The notes: generated by a model not told the origin, from the letters alone. A stretch of 64,000 nucleotides of DNA from Macrostomum hystrix (GCA_950097015.1 CATNEN010000014.1:2108001-2172000), one strand, 5' to 3'. Numbered from the stretch's first letter, positions 20,988 through 35,886 are shown. Numbers and translations are program-made.

Positions 20988-22125
<1,138 letters not shown>

Positions 22126-26523: not shown

Positions 26524-28720
26524 ATGCCAGGCCAGCCAGCCGCACACCCTGACAGATCTCACCTGCTGCTGCTGGCAGAGCTGCTAGTTTTCTGCCTAGG
26601 TCTGGCCGGCTGCCTGACTATGCAGCTGGACCGGGTGCAGCCCCATGCCTACATGGACGAAATCTTTCATGTGCCCATGGCGCAGAAGTACTGCCGCGGC
26701 GTCTACACCGAGTGGGACCCGAAGATCACCACCCCACCTGGCCTCTATGCCCTCTCTAGCGGGATCCTGCGATTGGTTTCCATGGCAACTGGCAATTCAG
26801 AAGACTCATGCAGCGTGTTTCGCTTGCGACTCACAAATCTAGTGTACTTTCTCATCAGCTTCCTGTCATTGTACGGCATTCTGTCCTCGCCGCGTCACTA
26901 TGACGTCATCAACCATGCCGATGAATCGAGTGGAAAAGTGGGCATGCCGGAGCCGCGGACTCGCATCTTGAAAGCCTTCTGCCTTTCGCTGCTCCCGGTG
27001 TCGTTTTTCTTTGTCAGCCTGTTCTACACCGACCAGGCGTCCGTGGCCTGCTTGCTGGCTGCCTACTTTATGCAGCTGAATGAGCACCGCCTTCTGGCCG
27101 GCCTCCTCGGCTGCCTGGCCGTCGCCTGTCGCCAGACCAACGCCGTATGGCTGCTGTTCTTCCTGGGCGCCGAGCTGGACATAGCCTGGCGGGCGAGACT
27201 GCGTGGGCTGGCGAAGCGACAGGAGGAGCCGGGACAGGCTGCTACAGGTGAGTGGGGAGTGACCTTTAATGCTTTTTGAGCTCTTATAATCTGCCGATAG
27301 TAGCTGGCCAACTCTTGCTCATGCTCAACTCTGATCATGACGAACCCTACTCATTACCAAACCTGCTCATGACCAAATTGACCAACCCTGCTCATTACTA
27401 ACCCTGCTTATAACCAACCCTGCTCATGACCAACCCTGCTCATTACCAACCCTGCTCATTACCAACCCTGCTCATGACCAACCCTGCTTATTACCAACCC
27501 TGCTCATTACCAACCCTGCTCATTACCAACCCTGCTCATGACCAACCCTGCTCATGACCAACCCTGCTCATTACCAACCCTGCTCATTACCAACCCTGCT
27601 CATGACCAACCCTGCTCATGACCAACCCTGCTCATTACCAACCCTGCTCATTGCCAACCCTGCTCATGACCAACCCTGCTCATTATAAAATATGCTCATG
27701 ACCAACCCTGATCATTACCAACCCTGCTCATTACCAACCCTGCTTATTATAAAATATGCTCATAACCAAACCATACAAACCCAGTCTCAATCTCAAATTA
27801 TCCTCTCTGCTTTCGCCTTCCACAGTCGAAGCCGCCCCGTCGCTCTGGTCGGAGGTCTTGGCGGTGCTGTCGCACCCGGCCCAGTTCCTTGCCACCGGCT
27901 GCCGCGTGGCCGTCCAGTCCTGGCCGCTGGTGACGGCTCTGGCCGGCTTTGCCGTCTTCGTCAGGATTAACGACGGCGTTGCCCTTGGCGACCGATCGGC
28001 CCACACCGCCCGATTGCACGGCCCGCAGGCACTGTACTTTCTGGCCTTCGCCGTCGTCATGCACCCAGCGGCGCTGTTCCGCACCCTGTGGCAGGCGGCG
28101 ATTGCGCCGGGACCGTCGAAGTTGCGCTGGCTGCGGCAGACGGCCCCGCCTCTGCTGGCGCTGAGCGGCCTGGCATGCCTGGCTGTCAGGTAAGACTGGG
28201 CACTGGGCGTCACGTCATCGGGATCTCTCCCAGATGTACCTGCCCCGATCCAAGGCTACAAGGTCTTGGTCACCCATCTCACTCCCATTGATTTTCTATA
28301 CTTATTTGCAGGTATCAGACCTACGAGCATCCCTACCTGTTGGCGGACAATCGCCACCTGACCTTCTACGTCTGGCAGCGGGTTTACCAGCGCCACTGGG
28401 CCGTCCGCTACCTGCTGGTGCCCGCCTACGCGGCCGCCCTCGTCTCCTACTGGCGGGCCGTGCCCCGCTCCGGCCTGTTCCGCCTGGCCCTGCTGGCCTG
28501 CACCTGCTTGGCACTGGTGCCCGCCGCGCTCATCGAGCCGCGCTACTTCATCGCCCCCTGGCTTCTCTGGCGAATCAGCGCCACCCGGCACGACTCCAGC
28601 AGCAGCCTCCTGTTCGAGACCGCCTACTTCGCCGGCATCAACGCCGCCACCTACTGGCTGTTCCTCAATCGGCCCTTCCACTGGGCCGGCCTGGCGGAAC
28701 CACAGCGCTTCATCTGGTAG
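26524..28720 (+). CDS. ALG10: Dol-P-Glc:Glc2Man9GlcNAc2-PP-Dol alpha-1,2-glucosyltransferase, 3 exons
   Basis: Exons 26524-27247, 27826-28189 and 28312-28720. Motifs PHAYMDEIFHVPMAQKYC, WDPKITTPPGLY, LFYTD, RQTNAVW, GVALGDRSAH, HPYLLADNRHLTFYVW and EPRYFI. Confidence 0.95.
27340..27770 (+). repeat. Minisatellite, 16 bp unit (ACCAACCCTGCTCATT/G), ALG10 intron 1
   Basis: Tandem 16-bp period. Confidence 0.93.
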
Positions 28721-28744
28721 CCCGGCTCATTGCAGTGCCCGTAT

Positions 28745-29315
28745 GCCCCACCTATTTCTGCTTCCCCACCTGTTTCTGCTTCCCCACCTGTCTCTATTTC
28801 CCCACCTGTTTCTGCTTCCCCACCTGTCTCTACTTCCCCACCTGTTTCTGCTTCCCCACCTGTCTCTATTTCCCCACCTGTTTCTGCTTCCCCACCTGTT
28901 TCTGCTTCCCCACCTGTCTCTATTTCCCCACCTGTTTCTGCTTCCCAACCAGTTTCTGCTTCCCCACCTGCCTCTACTTCCCCACCTGTTTCTGCTTCCC
29001 CACCTGTCTCTACTTCCCCACCTGTTTCTGCTTCCCCACCTGTCTCTACTTCCCCACCTGTTTCTGCTTCCCCACCTGTCTCTACTTCCCCACCTGTCTC
29101 TACTTCCCCACCTGTTTCTGCTTCCCCACCTGTCTCTACTTCCCCACCTGTCTCTACTTCCCCACCTGTTTCTGCTTCCCCTCCTATCTCTACTTCCCCA
29201 CCTGTTTCTGCTTCCCCTCCTATCTCTACTTCCCCACCTGTTTTTACTTCCCAACCAGTTTCTGCTTCCCCACCTGTTTCTGCTTCCTCACCTGTTTCTG
29301 CTTCTCTACCTGTTC
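28745..29315 (+). repeat. Minisatellite, 18 bp unit (CCCCACCTGTTTCTGCTT), just after the ALG10 stop
   Basis: Tandem 18-bp period. Confidence 0.95.
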
Positions 29316-29714
29316 CTGTCTTGTAATTCCCAGTTTTTAACTCTAGTCTCGCACTGTCGCATATTGCGAATTTCTTAATTAAACTAGTTATGTTCTCAAT
29401 CGAGTTGTTCAGACTGTGCCCGCAATATTCCTGTTTGTAAATGTTCAAACCTCTTCCAGGTGTTTGTAAGCCATTCTAGCAAGACTCAGTGTTATCTGTT
29501 TGTTCTCTGGTTCTGGGTTGTAGAAATGAGTCACAAATAGATCGCTGTTTAAATCCATTTTTGTTGCCAAGCGCACATTAATACTACATTACTGTGCGGC
29601 CATTCGTTTTTCTAAACCGTCAGTTCCTATTGTTATTGATTTATTGTAGTAAGAAGCGATCAGCTTGTGTTATCAGTATAATTGACAAGTGAGTATTGTG
29701 TTAAATGTCATGCA

Positions 29715-29720
29715 TTGCAG
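29715..29720 (+). promoter_or_regulatory. Candidate SL trans-splice acceptor at the start of the DDX55 reading frame
   Basis: ttgcag|CTA GCC AAG in phase 0; no in-frame ATG before the upstream stop TAA at 29679-29681. Confidence 0.6.
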
Positions 29721-29738
29721 CTAGCCAAGTCTCTAAAT

Positions 29739-29775
<37 letters not shown>

Positions 29776-32700
29776 GCTGGCAGCTGGACGGTGTGCAGCT
29801 GTCCGCTGCGGCACATTCAGCCATTGCCTCGCTTGGCTTTGCATCGCCGACTCCGGTTCAGCGGGCCTGCATTCCGCTGCTCCTCAGCCACAAGGATGTG
29901 GCTGCCGAGGCCGTCACGGGCTCCGGCAAGACCCTGGCCTTCCTGCTGCCGGCGCTGGAGCTGCTGGCCCGCCGGCCGGAGCCCTGGGGACGCGGCGAGA
30001 CCGGCGCCGTTGTTGTGGCCCCCACCGCTGAGCTGGCCAGGCAGGTGAGCGGCGTGCTGGACGCCCTGCTGGTCCACTACCCGCCAGGCATGAACCAGCT
30101 GCTGCTCACCAAGGGCTGCTCACAGACTGAGGTTGAGCAGTCCCTGGCCAAGGTGAGCTGGCTGATAATCAGTTTGCTATTCCTGTTAATTAAACTGGGA
30201 TAACAGTCGGTAATCAGATTGGGATTACAGTCGGTAATCAGATTGGGATTACAGTCGGTAATCAGAGTGGGATTACAGTCGGTAATCAGAGTGGGATTAC
30301 AGTCGGTAATCAGAGTGGGATTACAGTCGGTAATCAGATTGGGATTACAGTCGGTAATCAGATTGGGATTACAGTCGGTAAGCAGATTGGGATTACAGTC
30401 GGTAATCAGAGTGGGATTACAGTCGGTAAGCAGATTGGGATTACAGTCGGTAATCAGAGTGGGATTACAGTCGGTAATCAGAGTGGGATTACAGTCGGTA
30501 AGCAGATTGGGATTACAGTCGGTAAGCAGATTGGGATTACAGTCGGTAATCAGAGTGGGATTACAGTCGGTAAGCAGATTGGGATTACAGTCGGTAATCA
30601 GAGTGGGATTACAGTCGGTAATCAGAGTGGGATTACAGTCGGTAATCAGAGTGGGATTACAGTCGGTAATCAGATTGGGATTACAGTCGGTAATCAGAGT
30701 GGGATTACAGTCGGTAATCAGAGTGGGATTACAGTCGGTAATCAGATTGGGATTACAGTCGGTAATCAGATTGGGATTACAGTCGGTAATCAGAGTGGGA
30801 TTACAGTCGGTAATCAGAGTGGGATTACAGTCGGTAATCAGAGTGGGATTACAGTCGGTAATCAGATTGGGATTACAGTCGGTAATCAGATTGGGATTAC
30901 AGTCGGTAATCAGAGTGGGATTACAGTCGGTAATCAGATTGGGATTACAGTCGGTAATCAGAGTGGGATTACAGTCGGTAATCAGATTGGGATTACAGTC
31001 GGTAATCAGAGTGGGATTACAGTCGGTAATCAGAGTGGGATTACAGTCGGTAATCAGAATTGGTCAACTCGCCAACCCGAAGGGCGCCACCTTTGTCGTG
31101 GCCACGCCGCGCCGTCTCGGCGACCTCCTTGAGTCGACCTGCTCAACCGGCGAGCGGCTCTGCTCCTCCCTGCGCTCCGTGGAGCTGCTGGTGCTGGACG
31201 AGGCGGACCGGCTGCTGCAGCGCGGGTTCCGGCCGGCCCTGGACGCGCTGCTCAGCCGCCTGCCGAAGCAGCGCCGAACCGGCCTTTTCTCGGCCACGCA
31301 GACTCGCGAGCTCGAGCAGCTGGTGCGGGCCGGCCTGCGGAATCCCGTCTCTGTGCGGGTCACCGAGAAGCTCGCCAGGGTGCCCGCCGGCCTCACCAAC
31401 CTCTACAGCGAGGTGACCGCCGACAAGAAGCTCGACTTCCTGTGCCGCTTCCTCTCTGAGCACGCCAAGAACCAGAAGGTAGAGCTGGGCTGGGCACCTC
31501 TTACTGGGTGAAGTGAGATTTATGTAAAAACGGGATTCTTCTGATTGAAACGGGATTCTTCTGATTGAAATGGGATTCTTCTGATTGAAATGGGATTCTT
31601 CTGATTGAAATGGGATTCTTCTGATTGAAATGGGATTCTTCTGATTGAAACGGGATTCTTCTGATTGAAACGGGATTCTTCTGATTGAAATGGGATTCTT
31701 CTGATTGAAATGGGATTCTTCTGATTGAAACGGGATTCTTCTGATTGAAACGGGATTCTTCTGATTGAAACGGGATTCTTCTGATTGAAACGGGATTCTT
31801 CTGATTGAAATGGGATTCTTCTGATTGAAACGGGATTCTTCTGATTGAAATGGGATTCTTCTGTTTGAAACGGGATTCTTCTGATTGAAACGGGATTCTT
31901 CTGATTGAAATGGGATTCTTCTGATTGAAACGGGATTCTTCTGATTGAAATGGGATTCTTCTGATTGAAATGGGATTCTTCTGATTGAAATGGGATTCTT
32001 CTGATTGAAATGGGATTCTTCTGATTGAAATGGGATTCTTCTGATTGAAATGGGATTCTTCTGATCGAAATGGGATTCTTCTGTTTGAAACGGGATTCTT
32101 CTGATTGAAATTGGATTCTTCTGATTAAAACGGGATTCTTCTGATTGAAATGGGATTCTTCTGATTGAAATGGGATTCTTCTGATTGAAATGGGATTCTT
32201 CTGATCGAAATGGGATTCTTCTGATTGAAATTGGATTCTTCTGATTGAAATTGGATTCTTCTGATTGAAACACGATTCTTCTGATTGAAACGGGATTCTT
32301 CTGATTGAAATGGGATTCTTCTGATTGAAACGGGATTCTTCTGATTGAAATGGGATTCTTCTGTTTGAAACGGGATTCTTCTGATTGAAATTGGATTCTT
32401 CTGATTGAAACGGGATTCTTCTGATTGAAATGGGATTCTTCTGATTGAAATGGGATTCTTCTGATTGAAACGGGATTCTTCTGATTGAAATGGGATTCTT
32501 CTGATTGAAACGGGATTCTTCTGATTGAAACGGGATTCTTCTGATTGAAACGGGATTCTTCTGATTGAAACGGGATTCTTCTGATTGAAACGGGATTCTT
32601 CTGATTGAAACGGGATTCTTCTGATTGAAATGGGATTCTTCTGATTGAAACGGGATTCTTCTGATTGAAATGGGATTCTTCTGATTGAAACGGGATTCTT

Positions 32701-35700
32701 CTGATTGAAACGGGATTCTTCTGATTGAAATGGGATTCTTCTGATTGAAATGGGATTCTTCTGATTGAAATGGGATTCTTCTGATTGAAATTGGATTCTT
32801 CTGATTGAAATGGGATTCTTCTGATTGAAACGGGATTCTTCTGATTGAAACGGGATTCTTCTGATTGAAACACGATTCTTCTGATTGAAATGGGATTCTT
32901 CTGATTGAAATGGGATTCTTCTGATTGAAATGGGATTCTTCTGATTGAAACGGGATTCTTCTGATTGAAATGGGATTCTTCTGATTGAAACGGGATTCTT
33001 CTGATTGAAACGGGATTCTTCTGATTGAAACGGGATTCTTCTGATTGAAACGGGATTCTTCTGATTGAAATGGGATTCTTCTGATTGAAACGGGATTCTT
33101 CTGATTGAAATGGGATTCTTCTGATTGAAACGGGATTCTTCTGATTGAAACGGGATTCTTCTGATTGAAATGGGATTCTTCTGATTGAAATGGGATTCTT
33201 CTGATCGAAATGGGATTCTTCTGTTTGAAACGGGATTCTTCTGATTGAAACGGGATTCTTCTGATTGAAATGGGATTCTTCTGATTGAAACGGGATTCTT
33301 CTGATTGAAACGGGATTCTTCTGATTGAAACGGGATTCTTCTGATTGAAACACGATTCTTCTGATTGAAATTGGATTCTTCTGATTGAAATGGGATTCTT
33401 CTGATTGAAATTGGATTCTTCTGATTGAAACGGGATTCTTCTGATTGAAACGGGATTCTTCTGATTGAAACGGGATTCTTCTGATTGAAACACGATTCTT
33501 CTGATTGAAATTGGATTCTTCTGATTGAAATGGGATTCTTCTGATTGAAACGGGATTCTTCTGATTGAAATGGGATTCTTCTGATTGAAATGGGATTCTT
33601 CTGATTGAAATGGGATTCTTCTGATTGAAATGGGATTCTTCTGATTGAAATGGGATTCTTCTGATTGAAATTGGATTCTTCTGATTGAAATGGGATTCTT
33701 CTGATTGAAACGGGATTCTTCTGATTGAAACGGGATTCTTCTGATTGAAACACGATTCTTCTGATTGAAATTGGATTCTTCTGATTGAAATGGGATTCTT
33801 CTGATTGAAACGGGATTCTTCTGATTGAAATGGGATTCTTCTGATTGAAATGGGATTCTTCTGATTGAAATGGGATTCTTCTGATTGAAATGGGATTCTT
33901 CTGATTGAAACGGGATTCTTCTGATTGAAATGGGATTCTTCTGATTGAAATGGGATTCTTCTGATTGAAACGGGATTCTTCTGATTGAAATGGGATTCTT
34001 CTGATTGAAACGGGATTCTTCTGATTGAAACGGGATTCTTCTGATTGAAACGGGATTCTTCTGATTGAAACGGGATTCTTCTGATTGAAATGGGATTCTT
34101 CTGATTGAAACGGGATTCTTCTGATTGAAATGGGATTCTTCTGATTGAAACGGGATTCTTCTGATTGAAACGGGATTCTTCTGATTGAAACGGGATTCTT
34201 CTGATTGAAACGGGATTCTTCTGATTGAAACGGGATTCTTCTGATTGAAATTGGATTCTTCTGATTGAAATGGGATTCTTCTGATTGAAATGGGATTCTT
34301 CCGCAGGTGCTGGTATTCGTTGCCACCTGCGCAGTCGCCGACTACCTGGCCAAGGCACTGCGCCGACTCCGTCCGGACCTGCCGCCTCTGTCTGCCATCC
34401 ACGGCCGCATGCGCCGCAAGCGCCGCTCTGTGTTCGCCGCCTTCGCCGCCTGCCGCGCCGGAGCTCTAGTCTGCACTGACGTCCTGGCCCGTGGCGTCGA
34501 CCTGCCCGACGTCGCCTGGGTGCTGCAGCTCGACCCGCCAACCAGCGCCGAGCATTTTGTTCACCGCTGCGGCCGCACCGCTCGCATCGGCCGGGAGGGC
34601 CGCGCGATGCTCCTGCTGCAGCCTCATGAGCTGGAATACGCCGAGTTCCTGCGACTCAACCAGGGCGTTGTGGTGAGGCCTCCTTAGTTCTGCTATTTTC
34701 TAAGCGATTAAGTGATTTATGATGCACGAGGTTGCTAGGTGCAACTCAAGAATCCAGGTGGGTTGCTAGGTGCAAATCAAGAATCCAGGTGGGTTGCTAG
34801 GTGCAACTCAAGAATCCAAGTGGGTTGCTAGGTGTAACTCAAGAATCCAGGTGGGTTGCTAGGTGCAAATCAAGAATCCAGGTGGGTTGCTAGGTGCAAA
34901 TCAAGAATCCAGGTGGGTTTCTAGGTGCAAATCAAGAATCCAAGTGGGTTGCTAGGTGCAACTCAAGAATCCAGGTGGGTTGCTAGGTGCAACTCAAGAA
35001 TCCAGGTGGGTTTCTAGGTGCAACTCAAGAATCCAGTTGGGTTGCTAGGTGCAACTCATGTATCCAGGTGGTTGCCAGGTGCAACTGAAGTACCCAGGTT
35101 GTTGTTAAGCGGTATCAACTTTTTACGCAGGTGGAGCGCCAGGAAGTGGCAGAGGCGGACAGTCTGGCTGACCTGGGGCCGCAGCTGCGCCAGCTGTGCA
35201 GCCGGGACCGCCTGCTGTGCGAGAAGTCCATCCGAGCCTTCGTCTCCTACGTGCAGTTCTACCGCAAGCACGAGTGCCGGCTGCTGTTCCGCCTGCGCGA
35301 CCTCAACATCGGCCGACTGGCTTCCGCCTACGGTCTGCTGCGCCTGCCTAGGATGCCCGAGCTGCGGCGCCTGCCCGTCACCGACTTCCAGCCAGTCGAG
35401 GGCGTCGACCTGAGCGCCATTCCCTACCTGGACCGCAGCGTGCGGCTGCAGCGGGAGATGCAGCAGAAGCAGCAACAGGTGCTGAACCCCATTTCTGAGC
35501 ATTAATCCTTCTTAGTCCCATTTTTAATAGAAATTCGGGACTCCTATTCCCGTTTACCATTTTGAGATCCCTACCCATTCCAACTCCCAATTGTGAAGCT
35601 CTTTTCTCCCCTCCAGCAGCAGCCGAAAGACGCCAAGGACGACCTGTCGGCGCTGCCCGCCTACCGGCGCCTGCGGATAGAGCGGCGGCGAGAGCGCGAG

Positions 35701-35886
35701 ACTCGGGCCAAGCGCAAGCGCCGGGCCCCGGCAGCTGGCGCCGAGAAATCTGACGCGCTCACCGGCGAGGACCTCGCCGACCTGGAGCGCGACGTCGGCC
35801 TGCTGAAGAAGCTACGCAAAGGCCGCATCAGCACCGACCAGTTCGATGCGGCCTTCTGCCCGCAGGGCTCCGGCGACGAGGACTGA
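29721..35886 (+). CDS. DDX55: DEAD-box RNA helicase DDX55/Spb4, 5 exons, no genomic ATG
   Basis: Exons 29721-30152, ~31047-31478, 34307-34672, 35131-35478 and 35617-35886. Motifs TPVQ, KDVAAEAVTGSGKT, LDEAD, RRTGLFSATQ, TDVLARGVDLP, HRCGRTAR, RAFVSYV and YGLLRLPRMPEL. Confidence 0.93.
30195..31057 (+). repeat. Minisatellite, 24 bp unit (CAGTCGGTAATCAGAGTGGGATTA), DDX55 intron 1; stop-free in the exon frame
   Basis: About 35 units; translates as (LQSVIRVG)n continuous with exon 2. Confidence 0.95.
31528..34300 (+). repeat. Large minisatellite, 20 bp unit (GGGATTCTTCTGATTGAAAY), DDX55 intron 2
   Basis: About 138 units; last unit merges into the acceptor (gggattcttccgcag|). Confidence 0.97.
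34733..35095 (+). repeat. Minisatellite, 31 bp unit (GCAACTCAAGAATCCAGGTGGGTTGCTAGGT), DDX55 intron 3
   Basis: Tandem 31-bp period. Confidence 0.93.

What the first reader, a model, noticed from the sequence alone, without database searches (positions are those of the whole stretch)
29679..29780. DDX55 has no ATG of its own: start codon probably donated by the spliced leader
Seen: the DDX55 frame is closed upstream by TAA (29679-81), and no ATG lies between that stop and the Q motif. A good acceptor (ttgcag|, 29720) is exactly in phase 0, giving M+LAKSLNQQ...GWQLDGVQL, an N-terminus close to the usual DDX55 length. A tiny GT-AG intron at 29689-29720 cannot help because TGA is in frame just upstream. 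Known: flatworm spliced leaders end in AUG, which can act as the initiator. Inference: this ribosome-biogenesis gene cannot be translated without trans-splicing.
Basis: partly seen in the sequence, partly recalled or inferred. Interest (0 to 1): 0.75.

Follow-up and report, generated by a model that had tools for sequence, protein, structure and literature searches.

The report
DDX55 likely borrows spliced-leader AUG
In this Macrostomum flatworm the ribosome-assembly helicase gene DDX55 has no start codon of its own and most likely takes the AUG that ends the trans-spliced leader. Flatworms are already known to do this, and the RNA joint itself could not be seen here because a CAG repeat breaks the transcript assemblies.

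Summary
In the DDX55 frame a TAA lies at 29679-81, and the next in-frame ATG is at 30090, after the Q motif and the GSGKT motif. TTGCAG| ends at 29720 in phase 0.

- TTGCAG fits the published Macrostomum trans-acceptor motif.
- Two out-of-frame ATGs (29705, 29710) would spoil an unspliced leader.
- Four RNA-like runs cover exon 1 and splice it to exon 2. None shows any contig upstream of 29748.
- All three M. lignano copies of the orthologue are deposited as 5'-partial proteins without Met. Each begins right after an AG in phase 0, in an annotation that cuts genes at leader-read peaks.

The leader-to-exon joint was not seen. Logan's 31-mer contigs break in the (CAG)12 run, which starts 18 nt after the acceptor, and the read tools are capped.

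The exact acceptor is open between 29720 and 29741. Nearly every AG there is in phase 0, so the leader AUG is in frame either way.

The mechanism has been known since 2006 (Cheng et al.). This scan has already reported follow-up-confirmed cases in the same genome (LTV1, TAF10, ADCK1, TOP3A). This is one more probable member of a known kind, of low interest.

The parts
29679..29681 (+). In-frame TAA that closes the DDX55 reading frame upstream
29705..29712 (+). Two out-of-frame ATGs (29705-07, 29710-12) just before the acceptor. On an unspliced leader they would start a poly-Ala ORF (29705..30031) or a 4-codon ORF instead of DDX55
29715..29720 (+). It matches the published M. lignano trans-acceptor motif [T/C]TNCAG
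   Evidence: PMC8629364
29736..29741 (+). AATCAG, an alternative acceptor, also phase 0. It lies opposite the M. lignano acceptor region in the DNA alignment
29721..30152 (+). DDX55 first coding exon (144 codons, no ATG before codon 124) holding the Q motif and motif I. RNA contigs cover 29748/29782-30152
29739..29774 (+). (CAG)12 run coding for Q12. It breaks the 31-mer transcript contigs and hides the 5' joint
31083..31481 (+). DDX55 exon 2. RNA contigs join 30152 to 31083 (acceptor AG 31081-82), outside the intron minisatellite 30196-31058. The 3' end (donor near 31481) is approximate and taken from tblastn
28746..29318 (.). 18-nt tandem repeat (about 32 copies) between the ALG10-like stop (28718-20) and DDX55. 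It lies in the ALG10 3' region or the DDX55 outron
29378..29383 (+). ATTAAA, the only poly(A)-signal-like hexamer between the two genes. It suggests the upstream mRNA ends about 320 nt before the DDX55 acceptor
29441..29465 (+). Rival only: the sole upstream ATG that could reach the DDX55 frame by cis-splicing. The routes are TTT|GTAAGC to 29725, or GGT|GTTTGT (exon end 29461) to 29721. No RNA contig lies on it

Best explanation
DDX55 of this Macrostomum species (not M. lignano) is transcribed with an outron that is removed by spliced-leader trans-splicing. The acceptor is at 29720, or less likely at 29741. The roughly 35-nt Macrostomum leader ends in ...TTGCAUG, and that AUG lands directly in phase 0 in front of the first exon. 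It then serves as the initiator, giving M-LAKSLN-Q12-GWQLD... (or M-Q12-GWQLD...). The gene has no initiator of its own, so production of the helicase depends on trans-splicing. What is shown: the missing ATG, the in-phase acceptors, expression and splicing of exon 1 to exon 2, and the orthologue's 5'-partial annotation. What is inferred: the leader joint in this species, which acceptor is used, and translation from the leader AUG.
For: (1) There is no in-frame ATG from TAA 29679 to 30090, and 30090 lies after the Q motif and GSGKT, so a start there would give a dead helicase.
(2) The out-of-frame ATGs at 29705 and 29710 would capture scanning ribosomes on any unspliced leader. Trans-splicing at 29720 removes them.
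(3) TTGCAG equals the top motif [T/C]TNCAG at 21,754 M. lignano trans-splice sites (PMC8629364). Only two such motifs occur in 29340-29720.
(4) All AGs from 29719 to 29783 except one are in phase 0, so the AUG is in frame whichever acceptor is used.
(5) In four RNA-like runs, contigs identical to the window cover exon 1 at depth 15-26 and join 30152 to 31083. No contig lies on 29340-29747. The X1 contig starts at 29748, inside the CAG run. Runs X2-X4 hold 0.52-0.54 of the sampled words, about what an mRNA starting near 29721 would give (0.50).
(6) Orthologue: the three M. lignano copies (PAA61692.1, PAA53010.1, PAA79877.1) are deposited as 'partial' and begin QSQQPLP... without Met. In all three loci the CDS starts at the base after an AG (gagcag|CAA), in frame. 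That annotation cuts transcripts at peaks of leader-bearing reads (PMC5730564). Synteny ALG10 > DDX55 < LCAT is the same as in the window.
(7) The leader is identical in three Macrostomum species and ends in ATG (PMC8629364; PMC10468722 and its supplement).
(8) Use of the leader AUG as initiator is established in flatworms (Cheng et al. 2006, as cited in PMC12582326 and PMC9851317).
Against: No leader-joined read or contig was seen at 29721 or 29742, because the assemblies break in the CAG run and the read tools are capped. The polypyrimidine tract before 29720 is weak. Alignment with M. lignano favours 29741 as the homologous acceptor. M. lignano keeps an in-frame genomic ATG 12-15 nt upstream of its annotated start in all three copies, so a conventional start existed or still exists in the genus. 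Run X1 holds more words (0.70) than exon 1 explains. A cis route with a good donor (TTT|GTAAGC at 29466) exists on paper.
Confidence: 0.78

Rival explanations
1. A short cis-spliced 5' exon supplies the ATG. ATG 29441 is followed either by donor TTT|GTAAGC (exon end 29465) spliced to 29725, or by donor GGT|GTTTGT (exon end 29461) spliced to 29721. The N-terminus would be MFKPLPGV-SKSLNQ... or MFKPLPG-LAKSLNQ...
For: A full enumeration of ATG, GT and AG combinations in 28721-29751 leaves these as the only in-frame routes outside the tandem repeat. GTAAGC fits the cis donor motif GT[G/A]AG (PMC8629364).
Against: The good donor needs acceptor gctag| at 29724, which lies 4 nt behind the stronger ttgcag|. 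The donor that reaches 29721 is weak. No RNA contig lies on 29424-29479 in any of four runs, while exon 1 has depth 15-26 (a hole is not proof). M. lignano has no such exon: a minisatellite lies there, and its models are 5'-partial.
Confidence: 0.08
2. The mRNA has an ordinary unspliced 5' leader and translation starts at a near-cognate codon in frame, such as TTG 29682, TTG 29715 or CTG 29784.
For: In-frame near-cognate codons exist. Run X1 holds more of the stretch's words than exon 1 accounts for.
Against: Two upstream out-of-frame ATGs (29705, 29710) would be met first. No contig covers 29340-29747. The orthologue's boundary sits at an AG. Non-AUG starts are weak for a housekeeping gene.
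Confidence: 0.05
3. This is an artefact or a decaying copy. Either an assembly error near 29700-29780 hides a real ATG, or this copy is a pseudogene.
For: The 5' 60 nt of the exon, including the CAG run, were not checked by any RNA contig.
Against: Contigs from four runs match 29782-30153 with no differences and no indels. All five exon blocks are open and 62-94% identical to the M. lignano protein over residues 11-597. The gene is expressed and correctly spliced. The ATGs at 29705 and 29710 would need specific indels and run into stops.
Confidence: 0.03

Closest known systems
Schistosoma mansoni mRNAs that need the leader's 3'-terminal AUG as initiator (Cheng, Cohen, Ndegwa, Davis 2006, J Biol Chem 281:733; cited in PMC12582326 and PMC9851317)
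   Same: The flatworm leader ends in AUG, the recipient exon begins in phase 0 at the acceptor, and there is no usable genomic ATG. [quoted passage not shown]
   Different: The lineage differs (free-living Macrostomorpha) and so does the gene. In this case the joint and the translation are inferred, not shown.
Macrostomum lignano DDX55 (BOX15_Mlig030321g1 / g2 and Mlig008531g1; PAA61692.1, PAA79877.1, PAA53010.1)
   Same: It is the orthologue by best hit (79% identity over exon 1, 90-94% over exons 2-3) and by synteny ALG10 > DDX55 < LCAT. It has a Q-rich N-terminal tail before GWQLD. The annotated CDS is 5'-partial and begins right after an in-phase AG.
   Different: M. lignano still has an in-frame genomic ATG 12-15 nt upstream (tgcATGcag|gagcag|CAA), in front of the acceptor. 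In the window species the nearest ATGs are out of frame. The tails differ: QSQQPLPQPS in M. lignano against LAKSLN-Q12 in the window.
Other ATG-less genes of this same genome reported by this scan (LTV1, TAF10, ADCK1, TOP3A)
   Same: The architecture is the same: a first coding exon that opens at a phase-0 acceptor with no ATG.
   Different: Their follow-up notes report leader-bearing transcript contigs at the joint. Here the CAG run prevents that. I did not re-test those notes.

Membership tests
Genes with a spliced-leader-donated initiator AUG (flatworm type) | The organism has a spliced leader whose last three bases are AUG | tested here: met
   The window is a Macrostomum species by orthology and synteny with M. 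lignano. The Macrostomum leader CGGTCTCTTACTGCGAAGACTCAATTTATTGCATG is identical in three species where they overlap (PMC8629364; PMC10468722 supplement). No leader gene lies in the window itself.
Genes with a spliced-leader-donated initiator AUG (flatworm type) | No in-frame genomic ATG between the upstream stop and the essential N-terminal motifs | tested here: met
   TAA lies at 29679 and the first in-frame ATG is at 30090, after the Q motif and GSGKT.
Genes with a spliced-leader-donated initiator AUG (flatworm type) | A 3' splice acceptor with the exon starting in phase 0 | tested here: met
   TTGCAG| at 29720 and AATCAG| at 29741 are both in phase 0. The first fits the motif [T/C]TNCAG.
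Genes with a spliced-leader-donated initiator AUG (flatworm type) | The leader sequence is joined to that acceptor in RNA | tested here: inconclusive
   In one search, the contigs of four runs stop in the CAG run (X1 starts at 29748). Nothing is laid upstream, and one loose end in the repeat was dropped by the tool. The M. lignano orthologue's 5'-partial start after an AG is only indirect support.
Genes with a spliced-leader-donated initiator AUG (flatworm type) | Translation begins at the leader AUG | not testable with these tools
   This needs ribosome profiling or N-terminal proteomics.
DDX55 / Spb4 DEAD-box helicase | A DEAD-box core with Q motif and motif I, Helicase_C and the Spb4 C-terminal extension, with best relatives named DDX55 | tested here: met
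   Pfam DEAD at 1e-17 on exon 1. The best hits are DDX55 of many animals. The M. lignano orthologue carries DEAD, Helicase_C and CTE_SPB4, and it aligns to five window exon blocks over residues 11-597.
Downstream gene of a Macrostomum operon | A same-strand upstream gene, a trans-spliced downstream gene, and a repeat-adjusted intergenic distance under 1 kb (criterion of PMC8629364) | tested here: inconclusive
   From the ALG10-like stop at 28720 to 29720 is 1000 nt. Subtracting the 573-nt tandem repeat leaves 427 nt, so the distance criterion is met. Trans-splicing and a joint precursor were not shown.

The most novel reading that the evidence does not exclude
DDX55 may record a hand-over of the start codon within one genus. 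In M. lignano an in-frame genomic ATG survives 12-15 nt upstream, inside the outron next to the acceptor, and is kept in frame in all three copies even across a 3-nt indel. In the window species that ATG is gone, and only the leader AUG can start the protein. This would be a dated example of a gene becoming dependent on trans-splicing after the leader AUG made its own initiator redundant.
Probability: 0.35. Interest if true: 0.4.

Novelty: new member of a known kind. Interest (0 to 1): 0.2.

Why it matters
If it holds, an essential 60S-biogenesis helicase in this worm is made only from trans-spliced mRNA. That adds to the link reported for M. lignano between trans-splicing and conserved, stem-cell-expressed genes (PMC8629364). 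The practical point is larger. Gene predictors that demand a genomic ATG will truncate or mis-start such genes, and databases will keep them as 'partial', as the three M. lignano DDX55 entries show. The mechanism itself is not new.

Tried and rejected
(1) Read laying on 29340-30170 with the only four holder runs. This confirmed expression and the exon 1-2 joint, but the 5' joint is hidden by the (CAG)12 run.
(2) Word-index protein search with exon 1. It found no fragment from this species, only DDX55 of other animals at 53% identity or less.
(3) Exhaustive representative search. It found the M. lignano orthologue. A second word search with that orthologue's N-terminal 150 residues found no other Macrostomum protein, so no third species could be compared.
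(4) Clonorchis sinensis DDX55 also looked ATG-less ('partial', starting GWQFDG). Its locus begins at a run of N, so this is an assembly gap and was rejected as evidence. Paragonimus and Hymenolepis models start with their own annotated Met.
(5) Supplements of PMC8629364 and PMC5730564 hold no per-gene trans-splicing table for Mlig030321 or Mlig008531. No paper mentions these ids.
(6) Cheng et al. 2006 is not in the library and is cited second-hand.
(7) The leader sequence is not in the window.
(8) Acceptors late in the CAG run, which would give the usual short DDX55 N-terminus (M-GWQLD), were rejected as the main site. The X1 contig carries at least 27 nt of CAG before GGC, at the same depth as the rest of the exon.
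Exons were handled one at a time by reference or by tblastn of the M. lignano protein against the window.

Full report
**What is in the sequence**

The stretch reads ...tat TAA ttg aca agt gag tat tgt gtt aaa tgt cat gca ttg cag | CTA GCC AAG TCT CTA AAT (CAG)12 GGC TGG CAG CTG GAC....
- TAA at 29679-81 is in the frame of the helicase.
- The only in-frame ATG up to the end of the exon (30152) is at 30090. That is after the Q motif (GFASPTPVQ) and the P-loop (GSGKT).
- TTGCAG ends at 29720, and 29721 begins a codon.
- The 32-nt GT..AG interval 29689-29720 is preceded in frame by TGA 29683-85.

Exon 1 (29721-30152) hits Pfam DEAD at 1e-17, and its best relatives are DDX55 proteins.

**Organism and gene**

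The closest protein is M. lignano PAA61692.1, with 79% identity over exon 1. tblastn of that protein against the window gives five open exon blocks covering residues 11-597: 29775-30152, 31080-31481, 34304-34675, and 35131-35883 in two parts. Identity is 62-94%.

The M. lignano loci have the same neighbours as the window, ALG10-like > DDX55 < LCAT (window ORFs). The window is therefore the DDX55 orthologue of another Macrostomum species. The gene is intact.

**RNA evidence**

Only four runs of one study hold the stretch. Their type is not on record, but their contigs are spliced, so they behave as RNA.

Contigs identical to the window cover 29921-30153 in all four runs and 29782-29948 in X1, at depth 15-26. 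They continue with GCGCCACCTTTGTCG..., which is exon 2 from 31084. The joint is therefore 30152|31083, with acceptor AG at 31081-82.

No contig lies on 29340-29747. The X1 contig has 34 letters before 29782, so it starts at 29748 inside the (CAG)12 run (29739-74). A 36-nt repeat cannot be crossed by 31-mer assembly. The tool mentions one loose end dropped in the repeat in X4.

Two weaker points follow from these data:
- The mRNA contains at least 27 nt of the CAG run at full depth, so acceptors late in the run are not the main site.
- X2-X4 hold 0.52-0.54 of the sampled words. An mRNA beginning at 29721 would give 0.50, and a leader 150 nt longer would give about 0.69. X1 holds 0.70, which is unexplained.

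**Why the leader AUG is the best explanation**

1. There is no usable genomic start codon.
2. An unspliced leader would present ATG 29705 (a 108-codon poly-Ala ORF) and ATG 29710 (4 codons) before any DDX55 codon. Trans-splicing at 29720 removes both.
3. TTGCAG matches [T/C]TNCAG, the top motif at 21,754 M. lignano trans-splice sites (PMC8629364). That motif occurs only twice in 29340-29720.
4. All AGs from 29719 to 29783 except 29723 are in phase 0, because the in-frame CAG codons end in AG. The leader AUG is therefore in frame whichever of them is used.
5. The Macrostomum leader ends in ...TTGCATG and is identical in three species.
6. Use of this AUG as initiator is established in flatworms (Cheng et al. 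2006, cited).

**The orthologue**

All three M. lignano genome copies are deposited as 'partial' proteins that begin QSQQPLP(Q/R)PSGWQLD without Met. In each locus the CDS begins at the base after an AG, in frame...tgcATGcag|gag cag|CAA TCG.... The gene range equals the CDS, since it ends at the TGA.

That annotation cut transcripts at peaks of leader-bearing reads and then ran TransDecoder (PMC5730564). A 5'-partial ORF opening at the first base after an AG is what a leader-donated AUG would leave behind once the leader is trimmed. This is an inference from the annotation method. I could not find the per-gene trans-splicing flag.

**A qualification from the same loci**

M. lignano has an in-frame genomic ATG 12 nt (L001, L002) or 15 nt (L003) upstream of the annotated start. 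An in-frame TAA lies 33 nt further up in L001. The genus therefore had, or in M. lignano still has, a conventional initiator beside the acceptor. In the window species the nearest ATGs are out of frame.

The DNA alignment places the M. lignano acceptor region opposite window 29736-41 (aaatcag|). The true acceptor may therefore be 29741, giving M-Q12-GWQLD, rather than 29720, giving M-LAKSLN-Q12-GWQLD. I put this at about 0.3 against 0.6. The alignment in this stretch is weak.

**Rivals**

A full enumeration of ATG, GT and AG routes in 28721-29751 leaves the following outside the tandem repeat:
- ATG 29441 with donor TTT|GTAAGC (a good donor) spliced to 29725. That acceptor is poor, lying 4 nt behind ttgcag.
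- ATG 29441 with donor GGT|GTTTGT (a weak donor) spliced to 29721.

No RNA contig lies on that spot in four runs (absence is not proof), and M. lignano has a minisatellite there. Non-AUG initiation and an assembly error are less likely still, for the reasons given in the Rival explanations entries.

**Context**

The ALG10-like gene ends at 28720 on the same strand. The 1000-nt spacer holds a 573-nt 18-mer tandem repeat and one ATTAAA at 29378. By the published repeat-adjusted criterion of under 1 kb, the pair would count as an operon candidate if DDX55 is trans-spliced.

**Comparison and novelty**

The mechanism is known. In S. mansoni more than 40 cDNAs need the leader AUG (PMC9851317). This scan has already reported follow-up-confirmed cases in this same genome: LTV1, TAF10, ADCK1 and TOP3A (these are AI notes that I did not re-test). 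This is a probable further member, not directly confirmed.

The only mildly new angle is the contrast with M. lignano, which suggests that the gene's own ATG was lost recently.

**Left out**

Noticed in passing
window 30153-31083: RNA contigs of four runs join 30152 directly to 31083 (acceptor cccgaag|G, AG at 31081-82). This is 24 nt beyond the end of the 24-nt minisatellite (30196-31058).
   Followed up: yes
window 29919-29950: All four runs have other long contigs (1.8 and 2.4 kb) that share exactly these 30-32 nt (AEAVTGSGKT coding region) and then diverge. One continues upstream as ...GGCAGAGACATGATTGGCATCGCAGCAACC. Other DEAD-box mRNAs are identical at the nucleotide level over this motif, which splits the DDX55 assembly here.
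   Followed up: partly
L001 5989-5991, L002 5985-5991, L003 5986-5988 (M. lignano): An in-frame genomic ATG sits just before the acceptor in all three M. lignano DDX55 copies and stays in frame across a 3-nt indel in L003. In L002 the bases TTGCATG equal the last 7 nt of the spliced leader. This could be chance, a vestige, or an alternative conventional start.
   Followed up: partly
window 29340-29720 (run X1): Run X1 is listed as holding 0.70 of the sampled words, against 0.52-0.54 for X2-X4. Yet no X1 contig is laid upstream of 29748. X1 may contain outron or pre-mRNA, or the tail of the ALG10 3' UTR, dropped by a filter.
   Followed up: no
window 29705-30031: An ORF of 108 codons in the +1 frame relative to DDX55 starts at ATG 29705 and reads the CAG run as poly-Ala. 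It could only be translated from unspliced precursor RNA.
   Followed up: no
L004 1-3000 (Clonorchis sinensis CM030375.1): The 'partial' C. sinensis DDX55 (KAG5441184.1, starting GWQFDG) begins right at a run of N. Its missing start is an assembly gap, not evidence for a leader-donated AUG.
   Followed up: yes
window 28746-29318, 30196-31058, 31520-34300: Three long minisatellites (18-nt, 24-nt, and a larger array with a unit of about 24 nt) fill the spacer and the first two introns of DDX55. The M. lignano loci carry unrelated minisatellites at the same places (for example L001 5580-5950).
   Followed up: partly
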